The translations under genes and the position numbers were made by a program. Under the pieces are notes generated by a model. The model saw only the letters and a list, made by a program, of their open reading frames with translations. It had not been told where the DNA came from and did not search any database. A stretch of 64,000 bases of DNA, from the NCBI RefSeq assembly GCF_006345805.1, contig NC_043008.1, positions 36,890,001-36,954,000 on the forward strand. The letters run 5' to 3'. Of the stretch, positions 8,700 through 61,030 are shown in pieces. How positions within the stretch are numbered: the first letter of the stretch is position 1; the number at the start of each line of letters is the position of its first letter. The DNA comes from Octopus sinensis (Eukaryota).

Positions 8700-9760
8700 T
8701 AATAACTAAGTAATAATGGCAAATACCGAAAGAGAGCTAATAATGTTGATGTTGACAAAGCCCTCACACATCAGTAGTTGGTGTTTTCTGCCTTAAAGTC
8801 AGAAGGGTTTATCTTAGCAGCCCAAGATCAATGCCTACCTAAGAGGAGCTACCAGGCCAACATATTAAAGAACGGCAGTAACCCAACATGTTGTGTACGT
8901 AAACAACAAAATGAAACCATCGATAATGTTGTCTCCATGTGCAGTCTTCTTATGCCTACAGAGTATCTCAACAGGCATGGTAGAGCGGCACAGTATATTC
9001 ACTGGGTAATTTGGAAAGATTGCACCTGCCCCATGATAAAAGTAGTGGTAGCACAAACCACCACCAGTGCTTGAAAATGACCACATCTCACTCGTTTCGA
9101 ACTTCACTGTTCAAACTGACAGAAAGTTAAATGCAAATAGGCCAAACATTATATTGAAGGATTTCAGACAAAGACCATGCCTCCTCATTGATATGACTGT
9201 CTCAATTGATATAAATATCAAGACCTACCAAAAAAAACTGAGCAAGTATAAAAATTTTGAATAGAAATTGGCAAAAGGTGGAACTTCAAGACTAAAACAA
9301 TACCTGTTCTCATAAGTACCACTGGAATGATAGTAAAAGAGGCTGATTGCTACATAGGTTAGATACCAGGAAATCTGAAAATGGAAGAATTTTAAAAAAA
9401 TAGTGCTCATAGGAACTGCCAATATCTTCCGTAAAATATTGTCTATGTAATCCCCAAAATATTTTAATCTGTAAACAGTGTCAAAATACTTTTAAATATA
9501 CATAACAGAAAAAGCACTTTTACTGTCATCTTAACATCAGACTATCATCTTTTAATTAAACTACTTTTAAAACAAACTTCTAATTTACTTATTTTTTGAC
9601 AGGCATTCTCTAGAACAATACTCTGTGCAAAAACCAAATATATGGCACCTTAGTCATAAAACCAACTTGAACTTCTAACTTGTTATCTCTTGAGGTCCCT
9701 GGGTGAGACTTGGAGTCAACTTATTCTAATACAAAGCAAAAGACAAGCATATAATAATAA
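8700..9760 (+). mobile_element. R4/Dong-clade non-LTR retrotransposon 3' part (zinc knuckle + restriction-like endonuclease), decayed
   Basis: LKSEGFILAAQDQCLPKRSYQANILK...ETIDNVVSMCSLLMPTEYLNRH...IHW, then VLENDHISLVSNFTVQTDRKLNANRPNIILKD...LLIDMTVSID...KLSKYK. The 3' end runs into (TAA)n, the known Dong-type target. Confidence 0.88.
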
Positions 9761-10925: not shown

Positions 10926-11343
10926 AAGAATCCCTACAATATCATTCTTAAAAATAAACAATCACATCATTGAAATCTCAAATCTATGAGATAATCCAGG
11001 ATTAATTCAAAACAATGTGAACTTACAAGCATTACATTTGACACAATAGTCTAAATGCTAAAGGGTTAATAATTCTTTCTAAATTAGACACAAGGCCTGA
11101 AATTTTGGTATGTCCCCCAGCACTTCTTAACAACTGGTGTTGGTTTGTTCATGTCCCTGTAACTTAGTGGTTTGGCAAAAAGAGACTGATAGAATAAGTA
11201 ATCAGGGTTAGAAAAAAAAGCATATAGTGGGGTTGATTTGTTTGACTACACCATTCAAGGCAGTGCCCTAGCATGGTCACAGTCCAATGACTGAAACAAG
11301 TAAAAGGTCATTTGTGAATGACAGCTAAGCCTTTTTTGTTGTT

Positions 11344-12762: not shown

Positions 12763-12949
12763 CAAAATAAGCAACAAGAATTACTTCAGTAATTTGGTAT
12801 GATTGTTTCACACTACATCATTTTATTAAATGTTGTAAGTATTACAACAGTTTTAAAATGCTGAGCACTCATCAGCCATTAATAGAGGTTTTCCATTAAT
12901 ACATAGTTTTCATATCAAGTGTGCATATATATTATGCACACTTATATAT

Positions 12950-22379: not shown

Positions 22380-22870
22380 AAACGACCTTCAAATGTTGGG
22401 TCTCATGGAGGCGATGACAAGAGACTGAGACCTTTGGAGATATGCTGTGCTTGAGAAGACCCAGCAAGCCTAGGGACACCATAACCGTGGCCTATGCCAG
22501 TGCAGCATAACCGGCCCATTTAAGAGTACCCTTCAATCATTGGGCAATAAACTGCACTTGCAAAGACCTATTGAGTCAATTGAAGTCATTGTCATGGCAG
22601 TACTGCATCATTGGCACGTAAAAAGCACCATTCGGGCATGGTCGATGCCAGTACCGCCTGACTGGCCCTCGTGCTAGTAGCATGTAAAAAGCATCCACTA
22701 CACTCTCATAGTGGTTGTTGTTAGGAAGGGCTTCCAGCTGTAGAAACTTTGCCAGACCTGATTGGAGGCTGGTGCAACCTTCTGGTTTGCCAGCCCTCAG
22801 TCAAACCATTCAACCCATGTCAGCATGGAAAGCACACATTTAATGACAATGATGATGATGATGATGATAT
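22380..22870 (+). mobile_element. Retroposon family ending AGGAAGGGC.TCCAGCTGTAGAAAC...CCATGCCAGCATGGAAA + (GAT)n
   Basis: Related copies at 57360-57740, 52080-52320, 59080-59270, 21490-21650 and, reversed, 2500-2720 and 34070-34200. Confidence 0.75.
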
Positions 22871-22929
22871 ATATCTATATATACATGCATACATAAATAT
22901 GTATATGTATGCATGTAATATATATATAT

Positions 22930-22989
<60 letters not shown>

Positions 22990-23186
22990 GATGGATAGAT
23001 AGATAAATAGATAGATAGATATAGATATATGTATATATATATATATAATATATATATATATATATAAAATATTATTAGAGACAAAACCACTATTTTACTA
23101 TAAAATTGGATTTAATCCTAAATCTGATTTTTTCCCTGTAAATTTGGATTTATTCCCTAATATTTATTATATATATATATATATAT

Positions 23187-26100
23187 ATTAACAATTAAGG
23201 AACGGCCATAATAGGCCATTCACCCACTAGAAATAACAGCCAAAGCTTCTACCGCAAATAAAGATCAATTCCGTAAACAGGAGAAAATTAAAAAAACATT
23301 TACCCTGTAATTTCTTGTACGGTATACCGTTTCATCCGTTGTTTAATGGTAAACCAACCTAATTAAATTAAATCAAGTCAATCTTCCATAAGCCCTCGGA
23401 TTCATCAGCAAGAAATAGCTCTCGGGACAGATAATTACACGAGGCATATCCAATCTTGCCAAGTCAATATCTGACCTAAAATTTTCAAATCGTCGCACTC
23501 GCGCCAATTTATCGGCAGCAATAAATATCAGCCGTCGATTCCATTACGGAATTAACCAAAAAATTCATAATTAATCAATATAGGGTGGCAAGGAAAATTT
23601 TGTAGAATTTTTGCCACCAGCGGCCCAGCGGGAAAAAAAATTAAATAGTCATAGACCATTTTTAAGTTCAACATTAACAATTAAGGAACGGCCATAATAG
23701 GCCATTCACCCACTAGAAATAACAGCCAAAGCTTCTACCACGCAAATAAAGATCAATTCCGTAAACAGGAGAAAATTAAAAAACATTTACCCTGTAATTT
23801 CTTGTACGGTATAACCGTTTCATCCGTTGTTTAATAATGGTAAACCAACCTAATTAAATTAAATCAAGTCAATCTTCCATAAGCCCTCGGATTCATCAGC
23901 AAGAAATAGCTCTCGGGACAGATAATTACACGAGGCATATCCAATCTTGCCAAGTCAATATCTGACCTAAAATTTTCAATCGTCGCACTCGCGCCAAATT
24001 TATCGGCAGCAAATAAATATCAGCCGTCGATTCCATTACGGAATTAACCAAAAAATTCATAATTAATCAATATAGGGTGGCAAGGAAAATTTTGTAGAAT
24101 TTTATTGCCACCAGCGGCCCCGGGAAAAAAATTAAATAGTCATAGACCATTTTTAAGTTCAACATTAACAATTAAGGAACGGCCATAATAGGCCATTCAC
24201 CCACTAGAAATAACAGCCAAAGCTTCTACCGCAAATAAAGATCAATTCCGTAAACAGAGAAAATTAAAAAAACATTTACCCTGTAATTTCTTGTACGGTA
24301 TACCGTTTCATCATCCGTTGTTTAATGGTAAACCAACCTAATTAAATTAAATCAAGTCAATCTTCCATAAGCCCTCGGATTCATCAGCAAGAAATAGCTC
24401 TCGGGACAGATAATTACACAAGCATATCCAATCTTGCCAAGTCAATATCTGACCTAAAATTTTCAATCGTCGCACTCGCGCCAAATTTATCGGCAGCAAA
24501 TAAATATCAGCCGTCGATTCCATTACGGAATTACCAAAAAATTCATAATTAATCAATATAGGGTGGCAAGGAAAATTTTGTAGAATTTTATTGCCACCAG
24601 CGCCCAGCGGGAAAAAAATTAAATAGTCATAGACCATTTTTAAGTTCAACATTAACAATAAGGAACGGCCATAATAGGCCATTCACCCACTAGAAATAAC
24701 AGCCAAAGCTTCTACCGCAAATAAAGATCAATTCCGTAAACAGGAGAAAATTAAAAAAACATTTACCCTGTAATTTCTTGTACGGTATATACCGTTTCAT
24801 CATCCGTGTTTAATGGTAAACCAACCTAATTAAATTAAATCAAGTCAATCTTCCATAAGCCCTCGGATCATCAGCAAGAAATAGCTCTCGGGACAGATAT
24901 TACACGAGGCATATCCAATCTTGCCAAGTCAATATCTGACCTAAAATTTTCAAATCGTCGCACTCGCGCCAAATTTATCGGCAGCAAATAAATATCAGCC
25001 GTCGATTCCATTACGGAATTAACCAAAAAATTCATAATTAATCAATATAGGGTGGCAAGGAAAATTTTGTAGAATTTTATTGCCACCAGCGGCCCAGCGG
25101 GAAAAAAATTAATAGTCATAGACCATTTTTAAGTTCAACATTAACAATTAAGGAACGGCCATAATAGCCATTCACCACTAGAAATAACAGCCAAAGCTTC
25201 TACCGCAGCCAATAAAGATCAATTCCGTAAACAGGAGAAAATTTACCCTGTAATTTCTTGTACGGTATACCGTTTCATCCGTGTTTAATGGTAAACCAAC
25301 CTAATTAAATTAATCAAGTCAATCTTCTTCCATAAGCCCTCGGATTCATCAGCAAGAAATAGCTCTCGGAAGATAATTACACGAGGCATATCCAATCTTG
25401 CCAAGTCAATATCTGACCTAAAATTTTCAAATCGTCGCACTCGCGCCAAATTTATCGGCAGCAAATAAATATCAGCCGTCGATTCCATTACGGAATTAAC
25501 CAAAAAATTCATAATTAATCAATATAGGGTGGCCAAGGAAAATTTTGTAGAATTTTATTGCCACCAGCGGCCCAGCGGGAAAAAAATTAAATAGTCATAG
25601 ACCATTTTTAAGTTCAACATTAACAATTAAGGAACGGCCATAATAGGCCATTCACCCACTAGAATAACAGCCAAAGCTTCTACCGCAAATAAAGATCAAT
25701 TCCGTAAACAGGAGAAAATTAAAAAAACATTTACCCTGTAATTTCTTGTACGGTATACCTTTCATCCGTGTTTTTATGGTAAACAACCTAATTAAATTAA
25801 ATCAAGTCAATCTTCCATAAGCCCTCGGATTCAATCAGCAAGAAATAGCTCTCGGGACAGATAATTACACAGGCATATCCAATCTTGCCAAGTCAATATC
25901 TGACCTAAAATTTTCAAACTCGTCGCACTCGCGCCAAATTTATCGCAGCAAATAAATATCAGCCGTCGATTCCATTACGAATTAACCAAAAAATTCATAA
26001 TTAATCAATATAGGGTGGCAAGGAAAATTTTGTAGAATTTTATTGCCACCAGCGGCCCAGCGGGAAAAAAAATTAAATAGTCATAGACCATTTTAAGTTC

Positions 26101-29100
26101 AACATTAACAATTAAGGAACGGCCATAATAGGCATTCACCCACTAGAATAACAGCCAAAGCTTCTACCGCAATAAAGATCAATTCCGTAACAGGAGAAAA
26201 TTAAAAAAACTTTACCCTGTAATTTCTTGTACGGTTATACCGTTTCATCCGTTGTTTAATGGGAAACCAACCTAATTAAATTAAATCAAGTCAATCTTCC
26301 ATAAGCCCTCGGATTCATCAGCAGAAATAGCTCTCTGGGACAGATAATTACACGAGGCATATCCAATCTTGCCAAGTCAATATCTGACCTAAAATTTTCA
26401 AATCGTCGCACTCGCGCCAAATTTATCGGCAGCAAATAAATATCAGCCGTCGATTCCATTACGGAATTAACCAAAAAATTCATAATTAATCAATATAGGG
26501 TGGCAAGGAAAATTTTGTAGAATTTTATTGCCACCAGCGGCCCAGCGGGAAAAAATTAAATAGTCATAGACCATTTTTAAGTTCAACATTACAATTAAGG
26601 AACGGCCATAATAGGCCATTCACCCACTAGAAATAACAGCAAAGCTTCTAAAGCTTCTACCGCAAATAAAGATCAATTCCGTAAACAGGAGAAAATTAAA
26701 AAAACATTTACCCTGTAATTTCTTGTACGGTATACCGTTTCATCCGTTTTTTAATGGTAAACCAACCTAATTAAATTAAATCAAGTCAATCTTCCATAAG
26801 CCCCCTCGGATTCATCAGCAAGAAATAGCTCTCGGGACAGATAATTACACGAGGCATATCCAATCTTGCCAAGTCAATATCTGACCTAAAATTTTCAAAT
26901 CGTCGCACTCGCGCCAAATTATCGGCAGCAAATAATATCAGCCGTCGATTCCATTACGGAATTAACCAAAAAATTCATAATTAATCAATATAGGGTGGCA
27001 AGGAAAATTTTGTAGAATTTTATTGCCACCAGCGGCCCAGCGGGAAAAAAATTAAATAGTCATAGACCATTTTTAAGTTCAACATTAACAATTAAGGAAC
27101 GGCCATAATAGGCCATTCACCCACTAGAAATAACAGCCAAAGCTTCTACGCAAATAAAGATCAATTCCGTAAACAGGAGAAAATTAAAAAAACATTTACC
27201 CTGTAATTTCTTGTACGGTATATACCGTTTCATCCGTTGTTTAATGGTAAACCAACCTAATTAAATTAAATCAAGTCAATCTTCCATAAGCCCTCGGATT
27301 CATCAGCAAGAATAGCTCTCGGACAGATAATTACATGAGGCATATCCAATCTTGCCAAGTCAATATCTGACCTAAAATTTTCAAATCGTCGCACTCGCGC
27401 CAAATTTATCGGCAGCAAATAAATATCACAGCCGTCGATTCCATTACGGAATTAACCAAAAAATTCATAATTAATCAATATAGGGTGGCAAGGAAAATTT
27501 TGTAGAATTTTTTGCCACCAGCGGCCCAGCGGGAAAAAAATTAATAGTCATAGACCATTTTTAAGTTCAACATTAACAATTAAGGAACGGCCATAATAGG
27601 CCATTCACCCACTAGAAATAACAGCCAAAGCTTCTACCGCAAATAAAGATCAATTCCGTAAACAGGAGAAAATTAAAAAAACATTTACCCTGTAATTTCT
27701 TGTACGGTATACCGTTTCATCATCCGTTGTTTAATGGTAAACCAACCTAATTAAATTAAATCAAGTCAATCTTCCATAAGCCCTCGGATTCATCAGCAAG
27801 AAATAGCTCTCGGGACAGATAATTACACGAGGCATATCCAATCTTGCCAAGTCAATATCTGACCTAAAATTTTCAAATCGTCGCACTCGCGCCAAATTTA
27901 TCGGCAGCAAATAAATATCAGCCGTCGATTCCATTACGGAATTAACCAAAAAATTCATAATTAATCAATATAGGGTGGCAAGGAAAATTTTGTAGAATTT
28001 TATTGCCACCAGCGGCCCAGCGGAAAAAAAATTAAATAGTCATAGACCATTTTTAAGTTCAACATTAACAATTAAGGAACGGCCATAATAGGCCATTCAC
28101 CCACTAGAAATAACAGCCAAAGCTTCTACCTAACCGCAATAAGATCAATTCCGTAAACAGGAGAAAATTAAAAAAACATTTACCCTGTAATTTCTTGTAC
28201 GGTATACCGTTTCAGTCATCATCCTTGTTTAATGGTAAACCAACCTAATTAAATTAAATCAAGTCAATCTTCCATAAGCCCTCGGATTCATCAGCAAGAA
28301 ATAGCTCTCGGGACAGATAATTACACGAGGCATATCCAACTTGCCAAGTCAATATCTGACCTAAAATTTTCAAATCGTCGCACTCGCGCCAAATTTATCG
28401 GCAGCAAATAAATATCAGCCGTCGATTCCATTACGGAATTAACCAAAAAATTCATAATTAATCAATAGGGTGGCAAGGAAAATTTTGTAGAATTTTATTG
28501 CCACCAGCGGCCCAGCGGGAAAAAAATTAAATAGTCATAGACCATTTTTAAGTTCAACATTAACAATTAAGGAACGGCCATAATAGGCCATTCACCCACT
28601 AGAAATAACAGCCAAGCTTCTAAAGCCTACTTCTACCGCAAATAAAGATCAATTCCGTAACAGGAGAAAATTAAAAAAACATTTACCCTGTAATTTCTTG
28701 TACGTATACCGTATACCGTTTTCACATCCTTGTTAATGGTAAACCAACCTAATTAAATTAAATCAAGTCAATCTTCCATAAGCCCTCGGATTCATCAGCA
28801 AGAAATAGCTCTCGGGACAGATAATTACACGAGGCATATCCAATCTTGCCAAGTCAATATCTGACCTAAAATTTTCAAATCGTCGCACTCGCGCCAAATT
28901 TATCGGCAGCAAATAAATATCAGCCGTCGATTCCATTACGGAATTAACCAAAAAATTCATAATTAATCAATATAGGGTGGCAAGGAAAATTTTGTAGAAT
29001 TTTATTGCCACCAGCGGCCCAGCGGGAAAAAAATTAAATAGTCATAGACCATTTTTAAGTTCAACATTAACAATTAAGGAACGGCCATAATAGGCCATTC

Positions 29101-30293
29101 ACCCACTAGAAATAACAGCCAAAGCTTCTAACCGCAAATAAAGATCAATTCCGTAAACAGGAGAAAATTAAAAAAACATTTACCCTGTAATTTCTTGTAC
29201 GGTATACCGTTTCATCCGTTGTTTAATGGTAAACCAACCTAATTAAATTAAATCAAGTCAATCTTCCATAAGCCCTCGGATTCATCAGCAAGAAATAGCT
29301 CTCGGGACAGATAATTACACGAGCATATCCAATCTTGCCAAGTCAATATCTGACCTAAAATTTTCAAATCGTCGCACTCGCGCCAAATTTATCGGCAGCA
29401 AATAAATATCAGCCGTCGATTCCATTACGGAATTAACCAAAAAATCATAATTAATCATATAGGGTGGCAAGGAAAATTTTGTAGAATTTTATTGCCACCA
29501 AGCGGCCCAGCGGGAAAAAAATTAAATAGTCATAGACCATTTTTAAGTTCAACATTAACAATTAAGGAACGGCATAATAGGCCATTCACCCACTAGAAAT
29601 AACAGCCAAAGCTTCTACCGCAAATAAAGATCAATTCCGTAAACAGGAGAAAATTAAAAAAACATTTACCCTGTAATTTCTTGTACGTTATACCGTTTCA
29701 TCCGTTGTTTAATGGTAAACCAACCTAATTAAATTAAATCAAGTCAATCTTCCATAAGCCCTCGATTCATCAGCAAGAAATAGCTCTCGGGACAGATAAT
29801 ACACGAGGCATATCCAATCTTGCCAAGTCAATATCTGACCTAAAATTTTCAAATCGTCGCACTCGCGCCAAATTTATCGGCAGCAATAAATATCAGCCGT
29901 CGATTCCATTACGAATTAACCAAAAAATTCATAATTAATCAATATAGGGTGGCAAGGAAAATTTTGTAGAATTTTATTGCCACCAGCGGCCCAGCGGGAA
30001 AAAATTAAATAGTCATAGACCATTTTTAAGTTCAACATTAACATAAGGAACGGCCATAATAGGCCATTCACCCACTAGAAATAACAGCAAAGCTTCTACC
30101 GCAAATAAAGATCAATTCCGTAAACAGGAGAAAATTAAAAAAACATTTACCCTGTAATTTCTTGTACGGTATACCGTTTCTTTCATCCGTTGTTTAATGG
30201 TAACCAACCTAATTAAATTAAATCAAGTCAATCTTCCATAAGCCCTCGGATTCATCAGCAAGAAATAGCTCTCGGGACAGATAATTACACGAG
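23187..30293 (-). repeat. Tandem array of ~488-bp hammerhead-containing units, forward block (14 full + 1 partial)
   Basis: The unit start ATTAACAATTAAGGAACGGCC recurs at about 23187, 23673, 24164, 24651, 25140, 25619, 26104, 26588, 27084, 27572, 28064, 28559, 29066, 29554 and 30037 (period 479-507). Units differ mostly by small indels. Strand is given as the ribozyme-sense strand. Confidence 0.97.
23310..23416 (-). ncRNA. Type I hammerhead ribozyme (first of 15 minus-strand copies)
   Basis: The plus strand reads ATTTCTTGTACGGTATACCGTTTCATCCG...CGGATTCATCAGCAAGAAAT, the reverse complement of the motif. Predicted cleavage is between 23317 and 23318. One copy per unit follows, up to 30157-30266. 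Copies in units 6, 11, 12 and 14 show disrupting changes. Confidence 0.88.
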
Positions 30294-30614
30294 AAGCTTT
30301 GGCTGTTATTTCTAGTGGGTGAATGGCCTATTATGGCCGTTCCTTAATTGTTAATGTTGAACTTAAAAATGGTCTATGACTATTTAATTTTTTTCCCGCT
30401 GGGCCGCTGGTGGCAATAAAATTCTACAAAATTTTCCTTGCCACCCTATATTGATTAATTATGAATTTTTTGGTTAATTCCGTAATGGAATCGATGGCTG
30501 ATATTTATTTGCTGCCGATAAATTTGGCGCGAGTGCGACGATTTGAAAATTTTAGGTCAGATATTGACTTGGCAAGATTGGATATGCCTCGTGTAATTAT
30601 CTGTCCCGAGAGCT

Positions 30615-30721
30615 ATTTCTTGCTGATGAATCCGAGGGCTTATGGAAGATTGACTTGATTTAATTTAATTAGGTTGGTTTACCATTAAACAACGGATGAA
30701 ACGGTATACCGTACAAGAAAT
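30615..30721 (+). ncRNA. Type I hammerhead ribozyme, predicted cleavage after GUA at 30713
   Basis: Stem I ATTTCTTG (30615-22) pairs with CAAGAAAT (30714-21). Core CTGATGA at 30623-29. Stem II ATCCG (30630-34) pairs with CGGAT (30693-97). GAAA follows, then stem III ACGG-TATA-CCGT and the GTA triplet. All conserved core positions match the hammerhead consensus. Confidence 0.9.
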
Positions 30722-31092
30722 TACAGGGTAAATTTTCTCCTGTTTACGGAATTGATCTTTATTTGCGGTAGAAGCTTTGGCTGTTATTTCTAGTGGGTGA
30801 ATGGCCTATTATGGCCGTTCCTTAATTGTTAATGTTGAACTTAAAAATGGTCTATGACTATTTAATTTTTTTCCCGCTGGGCCGCTGGTGGCAATAAAAT
30901 TCTACAAAATTTTCCTTGCCACCCTATATTGATTAATTATGAATTTTTTGGTTAATTCCGTAATGGAATCGACGGCTGATATTTATTTGCTGCCGATAAA
31001 TTTGGCGCGAGTGCGACGATTTGAAAATTTTAGGTCAGATATTGACTTGGCAAGATTGGATATGCCTCGTGTAATTATCTGTCCCGAGAGCT

Positions 31093-31198
31093 ATTTCTTG
31101 CTGATGAATCCGAGGGCTTATGGAAGATTGACTTGATTTAATTTAATTAGGTGGTTTACCATTAAACAACGGATGAAACGGTATACCGTACAAGAAAT
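31093..31198 (+). ncRNA. Type I hammerhead ribozyme, predicted cleavage after 31190
   Basis: Same fold as 30615-30721: ATTTCTTG-CTGATGA-ATCCG...CGGAT-GAAACGGTATACCGTA-CAAGAAAT. Confidence 0.9.
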
Positions 31199-31423
31199 TA
31201 CAGGGTAAATGTTTTTTTAATTTTCTCCTGTTTACGGAATTGATCTTTATTTGCGGTAGAAGTAGAAGCTTGGCTGTTATTTCTAGTGGGTGAATGGCCT
31301 ATTATGCCGTTCCTTATTGTTAATGTTGAACTTAAAAATGGTCTATGACTATTTAATTTTTTTCCCGCTGGGCCGCTGGTGGCAATAAAATTCTACAAAA
31401 TTTTCCTTGCCACCCTATATTGA

Positions 31424-31467
<44 letters not shown>

Positions 31468-31959
31468 GCATACACACACACACACATATATTACCCATAT
31501 ATATATAATTATATGCACACAGACACACATGTATATATACATGTTTACATATGCACACACTCACACACACACACACAAATGTATATTGGTATATATATAT
31601 ATATATGTATATAGATCCATATGTATGTGTATGTTGTATACATATTTTTTCTTTCTAATCTCATTGGTAAATTTATGGAGGTTTTTTTTCTGTCTAAAAT
31701 CTATTTTTTTGGTGTGTGGAGGAGGCTTGATTCACCTTCTCTCATCATCATCATCATCATTGTTGTTGTTATTGTTGTGGTTGTTAGCTTGGATTAGAAC
31801 TTTTATCATAACGATCATCATTGCGATCATTAACATAATTATCGTCGACATCGTTTTTGCATCATTTCATCATTTCCATGACCATCATGAAAATGACCAT
31901 CACCATCATTTTTAGCATTATCACCATCACAACCACCACCACCATGGTCTTCACAGCTG

Positions 31960-34422: not shown

Positions 34423-34633
34423 ATACTCTTTTACTTGTTTCAGTCATTTGACTGTGGCCATGCTGTAGCACTGCCTTTAGTCGAGCAAATCAACTCCAGG
34501 ACTTATTCTTTGTTAGCCTAGTGCTTATTCCATCACTCTCTTTTGCTAAACCACTAAGTTACAGGGAAGTAAGCACACCAGCATCAGTTGACAAGCGATG
34601 TCGGGGGGAACAAACACAGACACACAAACATAT

Positions 34634-34666
<33 letters not shown>

Positions 34667-35910: not shown

Positions 35911-36765
35911 CATACATATACATATATATATACATATATATATATATATACATATACATATACATATAGATATATAAGAATAGAATTTTTTGCATAATAA
36001 GATTAAAAAACCAAGGCTGTGTAGATATTAGAGCATTTATAGATAGAAGGTCTTACCATTGTTTCTAGGATATTTATTGATAATATCCCTTCATCGGAGA
36101 TGGTGTGAGAGGATAGTTAAGTCATAGTTAGTTTAGATGTGATGCAAAATAGACAGTGAGGTGGAGGAAAGAAAATAGATGCAAGATATGTATGGGTATT
36201 GAAATTGTAAATCTATTTTTTAGTCATAATGGTATATATGCATTATTCCAATATCCTATGAGTAAAGTCCAAAAGTCCAACAGAGTTTAATATGAGTCCT
36301 TCCAAATATAGAGTTTATAAGCAATGTAAGATTTCCTTATGAGTGAGATCCAGCAGATTTTTAAACTTGGTCATTCCCAGTAGAGAATTTATATACAGTG
36401 TTGCAGAGTCAAAGATTTGTATTTAAAGTAAATACAAACACTTTAAATACAAACCATATCTTGCATCTATTTTCTTTCCTCCATGGATGCACCTTTGATG
36501 AAGCCCAGAGGCACACTCATGTACCTTAATTTTATCTACCAAATACTTCAGTTAACTGTAGGGATGGAAGTAAAGTGGGGTACTATGACCCCTTGGCTGA
36601 AACAGCTGTTAGAAACTATTCTACTTTCTATGTTCTACATTATATATTTTAGTAATTACTGGTATTTTTATATATGTAAAGCATAATCTGTTATACATGT
36701 ATGTATATTATTATAATTGTTTTTTAAAAAAATAAATAAATAGACCTAATCTCTCCCTCTCTATC

Positions 36766-37145
36766 CGCTTAGTCGAAGTCGACTCTCGGTTACTCGTTGG
36801 ATCAGTGTCCTCCAGTCAGTTCTATCCTGGGCCGCTTCTTTCAGATTGGCTATGTCCATTCCGGTATCACTCCTGATGGTGTCAAGCCAGCGGGTTCTTG
36901 GTCGGCCTCTTCCTCTCTTGCCACTGACCATTCCGAGCATGATGTCCTTCTCCAGGGATTTTCTTCACATAATATGACCGAAATATGCCAATCTACGCTT
37001 GGTTATCCCAGCTTCTAGTGACATTTTTGGCCTTATCAGCTTAAGAACTTCTCCATTGGTGAGCCTCGCTGTCCATGGAATCCGCAAAAGTCTTCTCCAA
37101 CACCAAAGCTCAAATGCATTAATTCTCTTCTGTCTAAAAGTTGAT
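36766..37145 (-). mobile_element. RTE/BovB-like LINE 3' end
   Basis: RINAFELWCWRRLLRIPWTARLTNGEVLKLI...ITKRRLAYFGHIM*RKSLEKDIMLGMVSGKRGRGRPRTRWLD...VTESRLRLSG*. Classic BovB-type C-terminus. Confidence 0.92.
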
Positions 37146-46999: not shown

Positions 47000-48170
47000 T
47001 ATTATTGTTGTTGTTGTTATTATTATTCTCATCTTATTTTCCTTTCTACTCCTGAGTTATTTATGTCACTTCTCAGGTTCTCAGCTGTGTACTTATAAAG
47101 TTTGGTATTTGTCGCTTTTGATGTCAGAATATTGTTGTCTTTGAGATGGTTCCAAGTGCATTGATCACAACAGGTAAAACTCTCTTTTGAGGCTCTATGG
47201 TTGTCTTTCATTTCCAATACAAGGTCTTAGTACCTCTCAACTTTCTCCCCTGTCTTCACAATATTTTAGTCTGCAGGAATAGCTATATTGATGAAGGTCC
47301 ATTCTTTAGACCCTCTTCAATAGGAGAGTGATTTCTGATCAGTTATGTTGTCGCTTCTTATCTATGTAGATTGACATATTTCATGTGAGTTTCACCTGAT
47401 CATTCTCTACTATTGGCAAAGGTTGGTGCTCATATCACTTATTGGAACATTTTAGCCCATACTTCTTGCACAACTCCAAGTGTATCTTGCACTGCCACTT
47501 TGTAACAGCATTTTTTGTACTCCTTTGGAGCCAGTTCTGGGCATCCAATTATTATGTGTTTAATTGTCTTCGATGATTTTTCACATAATCTACACAAAGG
47601 TGATATTGCTGTCTTATTAATGTTACACTTCATTCAGTTGGTGCATAACACTTGTTCTTGAGCAGCAAAGATGAGTCCTGTCACCTTCTTTAAAAATCCA
47701 TATCTTAACCATCTCCAAAATTTTTCCAACAGTTTCATCTGTTGTAAGCTGGAAAAAAAACTTTCTGGTAATCAATCTAAGTCATTTTGAGGTTTGTCTT
47801 TATCTTTTTACAGTGCTCTATAATGACAATGACGTTGACATGACTGACTTCCCAACCATCAAAATTTCAGGCCTTGTGCTGATAGTAGAAAGGATTACCA
47901 TTATTATTATTATTAAAACAACTACATGCTGAAATAGTTAGCAGGAATTTTGCCTTGAGGTTTGGTCATGAGTCTTAAATCTCAAGAATTCCTCAAAGAA
48001 TTCTTCAAAATACAGGATTGCACTTTTCTTAAGGCTGACTACACCAGTCACAATTCCTGCATCTTTCAGCCTCTTAAGAAGCCATTTAGATGTTGTGCCA
48101 AACACACCAGGTACTATGGGAATAATTGTCATCTTAGTCTTCCACATCCTCTTCATCTTTCTGGTTACAT
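47000..48170 (-). mobile_element. Second R4/Dong-like element, fragmented
   Basis: CNINKTAISPLCRLCEKSSKTIKHIIIGCPELAPKEYKK (CxxC...HxxxGC knuckle) and MKRMWKTKMTIIPIVPGVFGT...LKKSAIL (RLE tail). Interrupted by a SINE fragment at ~47830-47920. Confidence 0.8.
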
Positions 48171-49282: not shown

Positions 49283-49951
49283 TATATGTGTGTGTGTGTG
49301 TGTGTGTGTATGTATTTATGTGTGTATTTGTGTCTGTGTTCATCTCCCCCACCATCACTTGACAACTGATGTCGGTGTACTTACATCCCAATAACTTAGT
49401 GGTTCAGCAAAAGCGACTGCTAGAATAAGTACTAAGTACAAGGCAGTGAGCTGGCAGAAGTGTTAGCACGCCAAGTGAAATGCTTAGCAGTATTTCGTCT
49501 GCCATTACATTCTGAGTTCAAATTCCACTGAGGTCGACTTTGCCTTTCATCCTTTCAGGGTCAATAAATTAAGTACCAGTTACACACTGGAGTCGATGTA
49601 ATTAACTTAATCCCTTTGTCTGTCCCCTCTATGTTTAGCTCCCTTGTGGGCAATAAAGAAATAAGTACTAGGCTTACAAAGAATAAATCCTGGGGTTGAT
49701 TTATTTGACTAAAACCCTTTAAGGTGGTGCTCCAGCATGGCCACAGTCTAATAACTTGACTGAAACAAGTAACAGAGTAGAAGAATAGTAAAACCGTATT
49801 ATGAAGATCTACAAATTTATGTACATACACAATATCAAATTTAAGAAGTTATAAGCATGAAATTTTTACATGTCTTGCTAGATGTTATTACTTGCACAAT
49901 CCAATACAACAAGCTGGCAGAATCATTCACATGTCAGACAAAATGCATACT

Positions 49952-50107
49952 GTGTGGTAAGTAGCTTGCTTACCAACCACATGGTTCTGGGTTCAGTCCC
50001 ACTGTGTGGCACCTTGGGCAGGTGTCTTCTACTATAGCCTCGGGCCGACCAAATCCTTGTGAGTGGATTTGGTAGACGGAAACTGAACGAAGCCCGTCGT
50101 ATATATG

Positions 50108-50150
<43 letters not shown>

Positions 50151-50365
50151 ATGTTTGTGTGTCTGTGTTTGTCCCCCCAACATTGCTTGACAACCAGTGC
50201 TGGTGTGTTTACGTCCCCCGTAACTTAGCCGTTCGGCAAAAGAGACCGATAGATTAAGTACTAGGCTTACAAGAAATAAGTCCTGGGCATCAATTTGCTT
50301 GACTAAAGGCGGTGCTCCAGCATGGCCACAGTCAAATAAATGAAACAAGTAAAAGAGTAAAGAGA
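49952..50365 (+). mobile_element. Abundant SINE family, full copy
   Basis: Same family as 34423-34838, plus orientation. Confidence 0.9.
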
Positions 50366-50959
50366 ACAGCACTTTATCAATCTTTATGTCCTGAGTGCAA
50401 ATTTTGCGAAGGTCAGCTTTGCCTTTCATCCTTTCGGGGTCAGTAAATAAGTACCTGTTGAATACCCGGGACCCATGTAATCAACTGACCCTCCAAATTT
50501 CAAGCCTTGTGCTTTTAATGGAAAAGATTATTACTTGCACAGTCAGCTTTGTTTATCCAAGATTCACTCTAGTCTCCTCCCTCTGGAATCAAAGAAATAA
50601 AGTACCAGTTAAGTACAGGGTTTGATGTAACAGACTGACCTCTCTCCTAAATTTATTGCCTTTTACCAACACAAGGAATTACTATTCGCATTAGGGTCAA
50701 CTTTATCTTTCATCCTTTCATCCTTTGCTACAATAAACTACTAGTTACTCACTGATGTTAGTGTAATTGCCTAAGCTGCCCTCTCCTAATAATGACTGAC
50801 CCTGGTCTAAATCAGAAACCATTATTATTAATAAAACCACATATTTATAGACTGGGCCTTCATATCCACTGGTACTCAAATTCCTGGTTAGTAAAGCCTG
50901 ATTCAAAAGAAAAAAATCCTTTCCCCCAAAGTCAGTATTTTTCTGGTAGAATATCTTCT

Positions 50960-51350
50960 TCTTCGTGAGACAGCATTCACCCGGGGTGAGTTGAGCTGGC
51001 TTCATTCATCCTCAATGCTGCATCTCTCACAAACCAGGCCTGGTGATTTGAGGCTAGCAACCGCGTGATCTCCAACCACTCCTTATTCCAGCGGCGAACG
51101 CCGTAGACATGGGGGCCTAGGTTGGGTTCCAGATCAGCCTTGACTGTCACCAGCCAGGTTTTTTGTTGTCCACCACATCGCTTTCGCCAACCGTGAAGGG
51201 GAGCTGGGGCAATTGCTTCGTAGATGAATTCTCCTGGTTGACGACGGAGGGCATGACCCAGCCAACCCAATATACTTGCACTATGCTTGAGGATCTCAGT
51301 AGGAATGTTATCTTCGCCGGTAGCTTTGTTGTTTTTGAATATGAAGAAGA
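50960..51350 (-). mobile_element. RTE-like LINE derivative with an in-frame internal deletion
   Basis: FKNNKATGEDNIPTEILK (pre-RT KAxGxDxIPxE motif) is fused in frame to GWLGHALRRQP...WRKRCGGQQKTWLVTVKADLE (RTE C-terminus). Confidence 0.75.
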
Positions 51351-51576
51351 TTATGTTGCAAGTGAGAGGTGAGAGCCATTTTGGTTAACATAAATAATCT
51401 AAATGGAGAGGAAAAATTATTGAAACACGTTAACATTTTATTAGTATACGGATGGAAGATTCATGAAAAAGAATAAGAAGTTCATTCCTATTGATACAGA
51501 CCAGCACTAATCTCCTCAAATTTCTATTGGTTATGTTAAAGTAGCCATAAATATTATATGTTGTTACTGCACCACT

Positions 51577-53106: not shown

Positions 53107-53140
<34 letters not shown>

Positions 53141-53272
53141 TTGCTTGTCTGTATTTGTCCCCCGAAGATTGCTTGACAACTGATGCTGGTGTGTTTACGT
53201 CCCTGTAACTTAGCGGTTCAGCAAAAGTGACCAATAGAATAAGTACTAGGCTTACAAAGAATAAGTCCTGGG
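52938..53272 (+). mobile_element. Abundant SINE family, 3'-truncated copy
   Basis: Same family, plus orientation. Confidence 0.88.
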
Positions 53273-53657
53273 TGGTGGTGGTGGTAATAGTGAAAAGAAA
53301 GTTACCTTCTTGAGTGATGCCACACTCATAAGGGCTGGTTGCCTCGGTTTCATGGCATATGGTCACCAGTCCATCGTAGGATGACTCAGTTTTGCCAGCT
53401 CAGTGGACTGGAGCAACAGGAAATGAAGTGTTTTGCTCAAGAACGCAAGGCTCCACCTGGTACCAGAATCCAGAACATCTAAGTTATGTACCTTTATGTG
53501 TGTTGGTATGGCTGTGTGGATAAGAAGGTGCGCAATCCCAATGCATGGTATTTAGGACAAGTGTCTTTGACGACAGTGTTAGGTTGACTAATGTTTTCTG
53601 ACTGATATTTAGTAGATGAAAGTTATGCAGATGTCTGCCAAATTTTTTTTTTTTTTT

Positions 53658-53858
53658 CACTCGTTTCAGTCATTTGACTGTGGCCATGCTGGAGCACCGC
53701 CTTTAGTCGAGCAAATCGACCCCGGGACTTATTCTTTGTAAGCCCAGTACTTATTCTATCAGTCTCTTTTGCCGAACTGCTAAGTGACGGGGACGTTAAC
53801 ACACCAGCATCGGTTGTCAAGCAATGCTAAGGGGACAAACACAGACACACAAACACAT

Positions 53859-53893
<35 letters not shown>

Positions 53894-54982: not shown

Positions 54983-55396
54983 TACTCTTTTACTTGTTTC
55001 AGTCATTTGACTGTGGCCATGCTGGAGCACCACCTTTAGTCGATCAAATCGACACCAGGACTTATTCTTTGTAAGCCTAGTACTTATTCTATCGGTCCCT
55101 TTTCCAAATCACTAAGTTACGGGGACGTAAACACACCAGCATCAGTTGTCAAGCGATGTTGGATGGGGGGGGGGAACAAACAGATACACACAAACATATA
55201 CACACATACATATATATATAGATATATATATACGACAGGCTTCTTTCATTTTCCATCTACCAAATCCACTCACAAGGCTTTGGTCAGCCCGAGGCTATAG
55301 TTGAAGGCACTTGCCCAAGGTTCCATGCAGTGGGACTGAACCCGGAACCATGTAGTTGGTAAGCAAGCTACTTACCACACAGCCACTTCTATGCCT
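54983..55396 (-). mobile_element. Abundant SINE family, full copy
   Basis: Same family, minus orientation. Confidence 0.9.
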
Positions 55397-60567: not shown

Positions 60568-60995
60568 CTTTACTCTTTTACTTGTTTCAGTCATTTGACT
60601 GAGGCCATGCTGGAGCACCGCCTTTAGTCGAGCAAATCGACCCCAGGACTTATTCTTTGTAAGCCCAGTACTTATTCTTTCGGCCTCTTTTGCCGAACCG
60701 CTAAGTGACGGGGACGTAAACACACCAGCATCGGTTGTCAAGCAATGCTAGGGGGACAAACACAGACACACAAACATACACACAAATACATATACTCTTT
60801 TACTTGTTTCAGTCATTTGACTGCGGCCATGCTGGAGCACCGCCTTTAGTCGCGCAAATCGACCCCGGGACTTATTCTTTGTAAGCCCTGTACTTATTCT
60901 ATCGGTCTCTTTTGCCGAACCACTAAGTGACGGGGACGTAAACACACCAGCATCGGTTGTCAAGCAATGCTAGGGGGACAAGCACAGACACACAG

Positions 60996-61030
<35 letters not shown>

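What the first reader, a model, noticed from the sequence alone, without database searches (positions are those of the whole stretch)
23187..31431. Retrozyme-like array: 17 type I hammerhead ribozymes spaced ~488 nt apart
Seen in sequence: every unit carries ATTTCTTG|CTGATGA|ATCCG-(58 nt)-CGGAT|GAAA|CGG-TATA-CCG|TA^CAAGAAAT. That gives an 8-bp stem I, an exact CUGANGA core, a 5-bp stem II, GAAA, a 4-bp stem III with tetraloop and a GUA cleavage triplet. Three independent helices close around the exact core, which is unlikely by chance. Established: tandem type I hammerheads define metazoan non-LTR retrozymes and ribozyme satellites (newt satellite 2, Schistosoma Sm-alpha, cricket pDo500), and such transcripts can self-process to monomers and circular RNAs. 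Inference: this is a cephalopod family with a long (~488 nt) monomer that could produce unit-length linear or circular RNA and spread by a rolling-circle-like reverse-transcription route using an RT supplied in trans. I do not recognise this family, but novelty needs a database search.
Basis: partly seen in the sequence, partly recalled or inferred. Interest (0 to 1): 0.95.

Follow-up and report, generated by a model that had tools for sequence, protein, structure and literature searches.

The report
Octopod hammerhead-ribozyme tandem repeat (retrozyme)
An 8.2-kb block of 489-bp repeats in an octopus-like genome carries a self-cleaving hammerhead ribozyme motif in each repeat, so it is a new example of the known animal "retrozymes", and its layout suggests it was pasted in by reverse transcription.

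Summary
The array is real at 23187-31431, with a 489-bp consensus unit and 36% GC. It holds 17 positions of a type I hammerhead (HHR).

- The array is two inverted arms. About 14.5 units (15 HHRs) lie on the minus strand and about 2.3 units (2 HHRs) on the plus strand. They are joined head-to-head at 30292-30293.
- Only 6 of 17 HHRs match the stated motif exactly. Two more pass a relaxed descriptor, and 9 carry indels in the core or stems as assembled. Most of these indels look like long-read noise.

The consensus 107-nt motif folds unconstrained into the exact hammerhead shape (z = -5.0). The descriptor gave 0 hits in 300 shuffles of the window. The whole monomer is strongly and strand-specifically structured. 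There is no coding capacity.

Rfam does not detect the motif, plausibly because helix II carries a 58-nt extension.

Both outer ends are sense-strand 3' ends abutting (TA)n tracts, and the inner junction has 2-nt microhomology. This is the layout described for Penelope-like-element insertions.

Verdict: a new member of the known metazoan non-LTR retrozyme / HHR-satellite class, from an octopod-like genome. Cleavage, circular RNA and mobility are inferred, not shown.

The parts
23187..30293 (-). Long arm of the array. In monomer coordinates (1 = first nt after the cleavage site, 489 = A17) it reads 364-489, then 14 full units, then 1-131. It holds 15 HHR positions.
   Evidence: TRF period 488, 14.5 copies, 95% matches. 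BLAST of the consensus gives 95-99% identity per unit.
30292..31431 (+). Short inverted arm: monomer 68-489, one full unit, then monomer 1-238. It holds 2 HHR positions.
   Evidence: BLAST of the consensus, 96-99.8% identity; sequence read.
30292..30293 (.). Head-to-head inversion junction. The dinucleotide AG belongs to both arms (2-nt microhomology). The arms meet at different phases, monomer 364 versus monomer 68.
   Evidence: Sequence and BLAST ends.
30294..30587 (+). 294-nt asymmetric spacer (monomer 70-363 of the plus arm) between the innermost complementary arms. The structure is therefore not a perfect fold-back palindrome.
   Evidence: Inverted repeat I13: 30202-30293 and 30588-30679, 100% complementary, 294 nt apart.
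23169..23186 (.). (TA)9 tract abutting the 3' end of the minus arm. The element ends ...TTGTTAAT|ATATAT. A 200-bp (TA)n tract lies about 100 bp further out, at 22867-23066.
   Evidence: Sequence; TRF.
31429..31464 (.). (TA)18 tract abutting the 3' end of the plus arm. The element ends ...GATTAATTAT|ATATAT.
   Evidence: Sequence; TRF.
30615..30721 (+). HHR, exact motif, 107 nt. Predicted cleavage after A30713.
   Evidence: Unconstrained MFE equals the hammerhead fold: -31.5 kcal/mol, z = -5.04, 0 of 200 shuffles as stable. Strict match.
31093..31198 (+). HHR, exact core and stems, with a 1-nt deletion in the helix II extension.
   Evidence: Strict match; passes the descriptor.
29190..29296 (-). 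HHR, exact motif.
26718..26826 (-). HHR, exact core and stems, with a variant helix II extension.
25253..25360 (-). HHR, exact core and stems, with a variant helix II extension.
23310..23416 (-). HHR, exact motif.
27206..27312 (-). HHR variant: stem I shortened to 6 bp and two extra nt (TA) in the helix III hairpin. Core intact, plausibly active.
   Evidence: Passes the relaxed descriptor; alignment.
23797..23907 (-). HHR variant: one extra T in the helix III hairpin and a 3-nt duplication in the helix II extension. Core intact, plausibly active.
   Evidence: Passes the relaxed descriptor; alignment.
26222..26328 (-). HHR variant: 1-nt deletion in the 5' strand of stem I (gives a bulge), an A-to-C change in the helix II extension and an extra A in loop III. 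Core intact, activity uncertain.
30157..30266 (-). HHR with a GAAA duplication between stem II and stem III. Core disrupted as assembled.
29676..29781 (-). HHR with a 1-nt deletion in stem II and a C-to-A mismatch in stem III.
28693..28806 (-). HHR with indels in the 3' strand of stem II and in GAAA, plus a 6-nt insertion in stem III. Broken as assembled.
28190..28302 (-). HHR with the 3' strand of stem II scrambled by insertions. Broken as assembled.
27695..27804 (-). HHR with a GAT duplication between stem II and G12. The same change is seen at 24286-24395 and 24773-24882.
25741..25846 (-). HHR with a 1-nt insertion in the core (CUGAUUGA) and a deletion in stem III. Broken as assembled.
24773..24882 (-). 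HHR with a deletion at A9/10.1 and the GAT duplication. Broken as assembled.
24286..24395 (-). HHR with the GAT duplication between stem II and G12.

Best explanation
The locus is a multimeric insertion of a non-coding, about 489-nt 'non-LTR retrozyme', that is, a hammerhead-ribozyme satellite, in an octopod-like genome.

Proposed cycle:
1. Transcription of the ribozyme-sense strand gives a multimeric RNA. The promoter is unknown. Three T6-T7 runs per unit argue against Pol III.
2. Each type I hammerhead cuts after GUA (monomer position 489). This releases unit-length RNA with a 5'-OH and a 2',3'-cyclic phosphate.
3. Stem I pairs nt 1-8 with nt 391-398. This holds the two ends together for ligation into a circle, either by a host RtcB-type ligase or by the reverse ribozyme reaction.
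4. A reverse transcriptase supplied in trans, most likely from a Penelope-like element (PLE), copies the circle round and round, or copies a multimer.
5. Synthesis is primed from both 3' ends of a break in a (TA)n microsatellite. The two cDNAs, 14.5 and 2.3 units long, then meet head-to-head and are joined at a 2-nt microhomology.

Shown here: the motif, the folds, the architecture and the absence of coding capacity. Inferred: cleavage, circularisation, the identity of the reverse transcriptase and the integration route.
For: The motif:
- Every conserved hammerhead core position is present in the consensus: C3-A9 = CUGAUGA, G12-A14 = GAA, A15.1-U16.1, and H17 = A.
- Three helices close around the core. 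The unconstrained MFE of 30615-30721 is exactly this fold (-31.5 kcal/mol, z = -5.04).
- The descriptor gave 0 hits in 300 shuffles.

The monomer as an RNA:
- Sense strand -143.6 kcal/mol, z = -4.99. As a circle, -138.2, z = -5.2. Antisense only -96.9, z = -2.87.
- Six of the 14 pairs of the helix II extension are G-U, so this helix exists only in the ribozyme polarity.
- In the linear monomer fold, stem I closes the molecule.

Non-coding:
- The longest ORF is 67 codons. No exact record, no word-sharing homologue, and 0 hits among 1.84 billion representatives.
- No tRNA and no Rfam family in the units.

Class features from PMC7229834: type I HHR in short AT-rich tandem repeats, with no LTR, PBS or PPT. 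All are met.

Insertion signature:
- Both outer ends are sense 3' ends, at different monomer positions (131 and 238), each in an A/T-rich stretch merging into (TA)n.
- The inner ends are 5'-truncated at different phases (364 and 68) and share an AG microhomology.
- PMC8557442 describes exactly this for PLEs: partial tandems, an adjacent inverted 5'-truncated copy, a (TA)n target bias, and multicopy head-to-tail insertions of non-autonomous derivatives.
- A 2026 preprint links animal retrozymes to PLE pLTRs.

Unit similarity:
- Units are near-identical. Of 152 variable alignment columns, 111 are singletons.
- There are 85 indel events. 46 of 58 deletions contract a run, and 15 of 27 insertions are tandem duplications.
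- This fits a single young multimeric cDNA plus long-read sequencing noise.
Against: - Rfam's hammerhead models do not report any of the 17 copies, at gathering score or at E <= 10.
- The 10.1-11.1 pair is A-U rather than the usual G-C (own knowledge). No canonical loop I / loop II tertiary contact can be pointed to.
- 9 of 17 copies are damaged as assembled.
- Only one locus is available. No second copy exists elsewhere in the window. No related sequence was found in the viral, metagenome, prokaryote-genome or plasmid collections. Dispersal in the genome is therefore not shown.
- No target-site duplication can be read inside (TA)n.
- No PLE reverse transcriptase was seen in the ten TE-like ORF pieces tested.
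- There is an AATAAA in the sense strand at monomer position 191.
- Array growth by unequal crossing-over after a smaller insertion cannot be excluded.
Confidence: 0.7

Rival explanations
1. It is an ordinary local satellite DNA. The array grew by unequal crossing-over or replication slippage, and part of it was inverted by a replication-based rearrangement. The hammerhead is a relic or a passenger with no role in spread.
For: Only one locus is seen. No target-site duplication is readable. The region is packed with microsatellites that favour slippage and template switching. A 2-nt microhomology junction also fits replication-based rearrangement. One 11-nt deletion is shared by units in both arms.
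Against: The strand-specific RNA structure signal and the complete catalytic core argue for selection at the RNA level. Both outer ends are sense 3' ends in (TA)n, and both inner ends are 5' truncations. Target-primed reverse transcription predicts this; a random inversion does not. The published class shows that such repeats are expressed as circular RNAs (PMC7229834).
Confidence: 0.15
2. The inversion, and perhaps the copy number, are assembly artefacts of a noisy long-read assembly. The true locus would be a simple one-orientation array.
For: Differences between units are dominated by 1-nt run contractions and small tandem duplications, which is typical of unpolished long reads. Tandem and inverted PLE-type structures are known to trouble assemblies (PMC8557442).
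Against: The junction is not a fold-back palindrome. The arms meet at monomer 364 versus 68, with a 294-nt asymmetric spacer. The two flanks are different unique sequences.
Confidence: 0.1
3. The unit is not a separate element. It is the terminal pseudo-LTR region of an autonomous Penelope-like element, amplified here as a coding-region-less tandem.
For: PLE pLTRs carry type I HHRs. Retrozyme consensus sequences match PLE termini in Xenopus. The PLE-style insertion layout is present here.
Against: There is no RT or endonuclease ORF in the array, and none was detected in the ten TE-like ORF pieces tested. Metazoan PLE HHRs are described as minimal, with almost no helix III, whereas this one has a 4-bp helix III. 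This rival overlaps with the best explanation, since retrozymes are proposed to derive from pLTRs.
Confidence: 0.2
4. It is an endogenised copy of an exogenous viroid-like or deltavirus-like circular RNA replicon.
For: The size is small, the RNA is highly structured, and it carries a hammerhead.
Against: A ribozyme is present in one polarity only. The descriptor and Rfam find nothing on the antisense strand of the units. There is no ORF and no match in viral contigs.
Confidence: 0.03

Closest known systems
Metazoan non-LTR retrozymes (Cervera and de la Pena 2020, PMC7229834): coral, mussel and axolotl type I HHR tandem repeats expressed as circular RNAs
   Same: A type I HHR in every unit. Head-to-tail multimers. 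Low GC (36%). No ORF, LTR, PBS or PPT. A highly self-paired monomer.
   Different: The monomer (489 nt) is above the 150-450 range given there, though inside the 51-972 range of the 2026 survey. Helix II carries a 58-nt extension, against about 4 bp plus a loop. Helix I is an uninterrupted 8 bp with no recognisable loop 1. Helix III has 4 bp. The host lineage (octopod) is not reported in those papers. Expression was not tested here.
Newt/salamander satellite 2 and axolotl HHR_Amex repeats (330-350 bp)
   Same: Tandem genomic repeats with a type I HHR and a palindromic helix III/loop. Here ACGGUAUACCGU is a perfect palindrome, so a double-hammerhead form is possible.
   Different: The amphibian helix III has only 1-2 bp and cleaves efficiently only as a dimer. 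Here the 4-bp helix III should allow single-motif folding.
Penelope-like element pLTR hammerheads and PLE insertion architecture (PMC4209133, PMC8557442)
   Same: A tandem plus inverted 5'-truncated layout. Insertion into (TA)n. HHRs found on opposite strands a few hundred bp apart.
   Different: No RT/GIY-YIG ORF here. PLE HHRs in metazoans are 'minimal', with a very short helix III, helix II of 6-8 bp and low activity. This motif has a full helix III and a much longer helix II.
Schistosoma Sm-alpha (SINE-like element with a type I HHR)
   Same: A type I HHR in a short, repeated, non-coding element of an invertebrate.
   Different: Sm-alpha is SINE-like (own knowledge). Here no tRNA-like region is detected, and T6-T7 runs in the sense strand would stop Pol III.

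Membership tests
Hammerhead ribozyme, type I | Conserved core: C3 U4 G5 A6 N7 G8 A9, G12 A13 A14, A15.1-U16.1, and H17 not G | tested here: met
   The consensus and 6 copies read CUGAUGA ... GAAA ... U-A, with cleavage after GUA.
Hammerhead ribozyme, type I | Three helices around the core, with helix I as the open one | tested here: met
   The unconstrained MFE gives stem I of 8 bp (open), stem II of 5 bp plus an extension, and stem III of 4 bp plus a UAUA loop. z = -5.04. 0 descriptor hits in 300 shuffles.
Hammerhead ribozyme, type I | Match to the Rfam hammerhead covariance models | tested here: not met
   No hammerhead family was reported at gathering score or at E <= 10 on 23000-31600. The likely cause is the 58-nt insertion in helix II together with the A-U at 10.1-11.1. 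This could not be tested because trimmed sequences cannot be submitted to that tool.
Hammerhead ribozyme, type I | Loop I / loop II tertiary contacts of canonical metazoan motifs | tested here: inconclusive
   Stem I is a continuous 8 bp and helix II has a 7+7-nt internal loop after 5 bp. No canonical contact can be assigned. Mussel retrozyme HHRs also lack most of these contacts.
Hammerhead ribozyme, type I | Site-specific Mg2+-dependent self-cleavage | not testable with these tools
   Needs in vitro transcription.
Metazoan non-LTR retrozyme | Type I HHR within short head-to-tail tandem repeats, from dimers to large multimers | tested here: met
   17 HHR positions at a spacing of 477-503 bp.
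Metazoan non-LTR retrozyme | Low GC content, no coding capacity, no LTR/PBS/PPT | tested here: met
   36% GC and a longest ORF of 67 codons. No protein relatives. The unit is a simple repeat without terminal repeats.
Metazoan non-LTR retrozyme | Monomer size of about 150-450 bp | tested here: inconclusive
   489 bp is slightly above the range in PMC7229834 but within the 51-972 bp range of the 2026 survey.
Metazoan non-LTR retrozyme | Highly self-paired monomer RNA | tested here: met
   z = -4.99 as a linear molecule and -5.2 as a circle, with 60% of nucleotides paired.
Metazoan non-LTR retrozyme | Expressed as linear and circular unit-length RNA | not testable with these tools
   No transcriptome access.
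Metazoan non-LTR retrozyme | Dispersed at many loci (mobility) | not testable with these tools
   Only one locus in the window. No cephalopod genome collection is available. Searches of other collections were empty.
Autonomous Penelope-like element | ORF encoding an RT, with or without a GIY-YIG endonuclease | tested here: not met
   No long ORF in the array. Pfam on ten TE-like ORF pieces of the window gave only a weak zf-RVT hit at 47442-47633.
Autonomous Penelope-like element | Insertion layout: partial tandem, adjacent inverted 5'-truncated copy, microsatellite target | tested here: met
   compared with the description in PMC8557442. This shows a PLE-like mode of insertion, not membership of the family.
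Viroid-like / deltavirus-like circular RNA replicon | Ribozymes in both polarities (or a delta-antigen ORF) | tested here: not met
   The HHR is in one polarity only. No other ribozyme family was found. There is no ORF.

The most novel reading that the evidence does not exclude
The locus may be a nearly untouched record of one integration event. In that event a circular retrozyme RNA would have been copied by rolling-circle reverse transcription from both ends of a break in a (TA)n tract (twin priming). That would give a 14.5-unit and a 2.3-unit cDNA, joined head-to-head.

If many octopod loci show the same anatomy, this would be direct genomic evidence for two things that are so far only hypothesised: the mobilisation route of animal retrozymes, and its dependence on PLE machinery. 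It would involve a hammerhead variant (long helix II, A-U at 10.1-11.1) that standard Rfam annotation misses.

A transcript crossing the junction would also fold into a hairpin of about 840 bp. That is a possible source of small RNAs or an ADAR substrate in a lineage known for heavy RNA editing.
Probability: 0.3. Interest if true: 0.65.

Novelty: new member of a known kind. Interest (0 to 1): 0.42.

Why it matters
Tandem type I hammerheads (animal retrozymes) are a known but poorly understood class. How they are mobilised is still a hypothesis.

This octopod-like family adds three things:
- It comes from a lineage not covered in the searchable literature. The only cephalopod mention found is a count of 235 Rfam hammerhead hits in the giant squid genome.
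- Its ribozyme architecture escapes Rfam. Annotation-based censuses may therefore undercount such elements.
- The locus layout matches Penelope-like-element insertions point by point, which gives a concrete, genome-wide testable prediction.

It is not a new kind of system.

Tried and rejected
- Rfam at gathering score on the whole window and at E <= 10 on 23000-31600 reported no hammerhead. The only hits were sub-threshold miRNA-like matches in TG/TA low-complexity DNA at 31437-31600, rejected as artefacts.
- I tried to reach other copies through the unit's 65-aa ORF. The exact-sequence look-up was not on record. The word-indexed homology search found no candidate. The exhaustive phmmer search of 1.84 billion representatives gave 0 hits. 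These results support a non-coding unit but yielded no related loci.
- Exact-pattern scans with a 23-26-nt HHR segment gave 0 matches in viral contigs, JGI metagenomes and GTDB genomes. blastn of two units against plasmids gave no match, so there is no sign of a vector or prokaryotic contaminant.
- ARAGORN found no tRNA-like part, which rejects a tRNA-SINE design.
- Pfam on ten TE-like ORF fragments found no PLE RT or endonuclease.
- The CTGATGA...GAAAC match at 12805-12875 fails the helix descriptor and is a chance match.
- My first fuzzy-regex scan timed out and was replaced by pairwise alignment.
- Literature searches for cephalopod, octopus or squid hammerheads or retrozymes found no description of this family.

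Full report
**Observation**

Tandem Repeats Finder reports one large array at 23187-30293, with period 488, 14.5 copies and 95% matches.

The array is not uniform in orientation. The pattern CTGATGA-N-GAAAC and the fuzzy motif searches put most copies on the minus strand and only two on the plus strand. I use monomer coordinates in which 1 is the first nucleotide after the predicted cleavage site and 489 is A17.
- The minus arm reads 364-489, then 14 full units, then 1-131 (window 30293 down to 23187).
- The plus arm reads 68-489, then one full unit, then 1-238 (window 30292 to 31431).

**The motif**

The 107-nt stretch 30615-30721 was folded without any constraint. The result is exactly the hammerhead secondary structure:
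- stem I of 8 bp;
- an unpaired core;
- stem II of 5 bp, continued after an internal loop by 4 + 14 further base pairs;
- stem III of 4 bp (including A15.1-U16.1) with a UAUA loop.

The energy is -31.5 kcal/mol against -17.0 +/- 2.9 for shuffles, z = -5.04.

I wrote a relaxed type I descriptor: CUGANGA, GAAA, an A-U pair at 15.1-16.1, H17 not G, and stems of at least 5/4/3 bp. It finds 8 copies in the array, none elsewhere in the window, and none in 300 dinucleotide-preserving shuffles of the whole window on both strands. The motif is therefore real and not a chance match.

**Intactness**

Two more (23797-23907 and 27206-27312) have an intact core with small changes in helix III, the helix II extension or stem I. 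Nine carry indels or small duplications in the core or at helix junctions.

Across the 15 full units there are 157 indel columns against 50 substitutions. These resolve into 85 indel events:
- 50 are single-base deletions;
- 46 of the 58 deletions contract a run;
- 15 of the 27 insertions are tandem duplications.

Of 152 variable columns, 111 are singletons. I read this as largely long-read consensus noise on an array of near-identical units. That is an inference and needs the raw reads. One change, a GAT duplication before G12, recurs in three units and may be real.

**The whole unit as an RNA**

The consensus monomer has 36% GC, and its longest stop-free stretch is 67 codons. The 65-aa ORF has no exact record, no word-sharing homologue, and no hit among 1.84 billion representative proteins. 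ARAGORN and Rfam find no tRNA or other known RNA family in the units.

The sense monomer folds to -143.6 kcal/mol (z = -4.99) as a linear molecule and -138.2 (z = -5.2) as a circle. The antisense reaches only -96.9 (z = -2.87). Six of the 14 pairs of the helix II extension are G-U, so that helix exists only in the ribozyme polarity. In the linear monomer fold, nt 1-8 pair with nt 391-398 (stem I). This closes the molecule and puts the 5' and 3' ends side by side, which is the geometry expected for circularisation.

Helix III plus its loop, ACGGUAUACCGU, is a perfect palindrome, so a double-hammerhead form is also possible. The sense strand has three T6-T7 runs per unit. By established knowledge these would terminate Pol III, so multimeric sense transcripts would need another polymerase.

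**Architecture of the locus**

The two arms meet head-to-head at 30292-30293, where the dinucleotide AG can belong to either arm. The phases differ (364 versus 68). The innermost complementary arms, 30202-30293 and 30588-30679, are 100% complementary and separated by 294 nt. The structure is therefore not the perfect fold-back expected from a read artefact.

Both outer ends are 3' ends of the ribozyme-sense strand. They stop at different unit positions:
- position 131: ...TTGTTAAT|ATATAT
- position 238: ...GATTAATTAT|ATATAT

Each merges into a (TA)n tract, at 23169-23186 and 31429-31464.

Target-primed reverse transcription from both sides of a break would give exactly this: 3' ends outwards in the target, 5'-truncated ends meeting in the middle, and microhomology at all three joints. 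The literature on Penelope-like elements describes the same picture. It mentions partial tandems, an adjacent inverted 5'-truncated copy, a (TA)n target preference in some clades, and multicopy head-to-tail insertions of non-autonomous derivatives (PMC8557442). It also reports hammerheads on opposite strands a few hundred bp apart (PMC4209133). A 2026 preprint argues that animal retrozymes derive from PLE pLTRs and co-occur with PLEs.

No PLE reverse transcriptase was found in the ten TE-like ORF pieces of the window that I tested. Any such enzyme would therefore have to act in trans.

**Origin**

A SINE-like repeat occurs about ten times in the window. One of its ORFs (49923-50429, minus strand) has its best protein hits in Octopus vulgaris and Argonauta hians. 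This supports an octopod-like source. There is no sign of a vector or a prokaryotic or viral contaminant.

**Comparison with known systems**

The element meets the sequence-level definition of metazoan non-LTR retrozymes: a type I HHR in AT-rich, non-coding, head-to-tail repeats that fold into highly paired monomers (PMC7229834).

It differs in several details:
- The monomer is at the upper end of the size range.
- Helix II carries a 58-nt extension, where the canonical form has about 4 bp.
- Stem I is uninterrupted, with no recognisable loop 1.
- Helix III has 4 bp, where canonical metazoan motifs have 1-2 bp.
- The 10.1-11.1 pair is A-U, where G-C is usual (own knowledge).

Rfam's models do not report it, even at E <= 10. 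I attribute this to the long insertion but could not test that.

The searchable literature does not describe a cephalopod retrozyme. The one relevant statement is a count of 235 Rfam hammerhead hits in the giant squid genome.

**Verdict**

The motif, count and coordinates are right. The claim that every unit carries the motif, and the implied single orientation, are wrong. The retrozyme-like interpretation is supported at the sequence level and strengthened by the insertion signature.

This is a new member of a known kind, with some variant features in the ribozyme. Self-cleavage, circular RNA, genome-wide dispersal and the identity of the reverse transcriptase remain to be shown.

The main rivals are a non-mobile local satellite, an assembly artefact at the inversion, and a PLE pLTR-derived tandem. 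The last of these overlaps with the favoured reading.

Noticed in passing
window 60571-61012, with further copies at 11108-11306, 34424-34644, 49309-49779, 50138-50359, 53124-53272, 53655-53873 and 54983-55212: A SINE-like repeat of about 222 bp occurs about ten times in the window (76-94% identity), once as a tandem dimer. An ORF through one copy has its best hits among hypothetical proteins of Octopus vulgaris and Argonauta hians.
   Followed up: partly
window 29450-31431: The two inverted arms would let a transcript crossing the junction fold into a hairpin of about 840 bp with a 294-nt loop. This is a possible dsRNA source (small RNAs or ADAR editing). It is pure inference.
   Followed up: no
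window 24783-25262 (unit m11) and 30714-31190 (unit p01): The same 11-nt deletion (AATGTTTTTTT, monomer positions about 18-28) is present in one unit of each arm. It is either a recurrent slippage deletion or a real template variant.
   Followed up: partly
window 31437-31600: Sub-threshold Rfam matches to mir-297, mir-3149, mir-466 and similar families (17-40 bits against gathering scores of 54-100) lie in TG/TA low-complexity DNA just right of the array. I judge them false positives.
   Followed up: yes
window 23067-23168: About 100 bp of non-repeat sequence, containing a 21-bp imperfect direct repeat (23119-23158), lies between the short (TA)9 next to the array and a 200-bp (TA)n tract at 22867-23066. 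It has no similarity to the unit. Whether it is target DNA or a PLE-style 'tail' is unknown.
   Followed up: partly
window 47442-47633 (-), 36764-36964 (-), 8778-9261 (+), 50980-51384 (-): Short ORF fragments resemble the C-terminal parts of LINE-type reverse transcriptases. Only 47442-47633 gave a Pfam hit (zf-RVT, E = 0.0022, below the cut-off). They are decayed retrotransposon remnants, not PLEs as far as tested.
   Followed up: partly
whole window: Microsatellite density is very high (138 TRF rows, mostly TA, TG/CA, TAA and GA tracts), and there is no convincing long ORF. The region looks like intergenic or intronic repeat-rich DNA.
   Followed up: no
window 12805-12875 (-): There is an isolated CTGATGA...GAAAC match outside the array. 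It lacks the three helices and is a chance match.
   Followed up: yes
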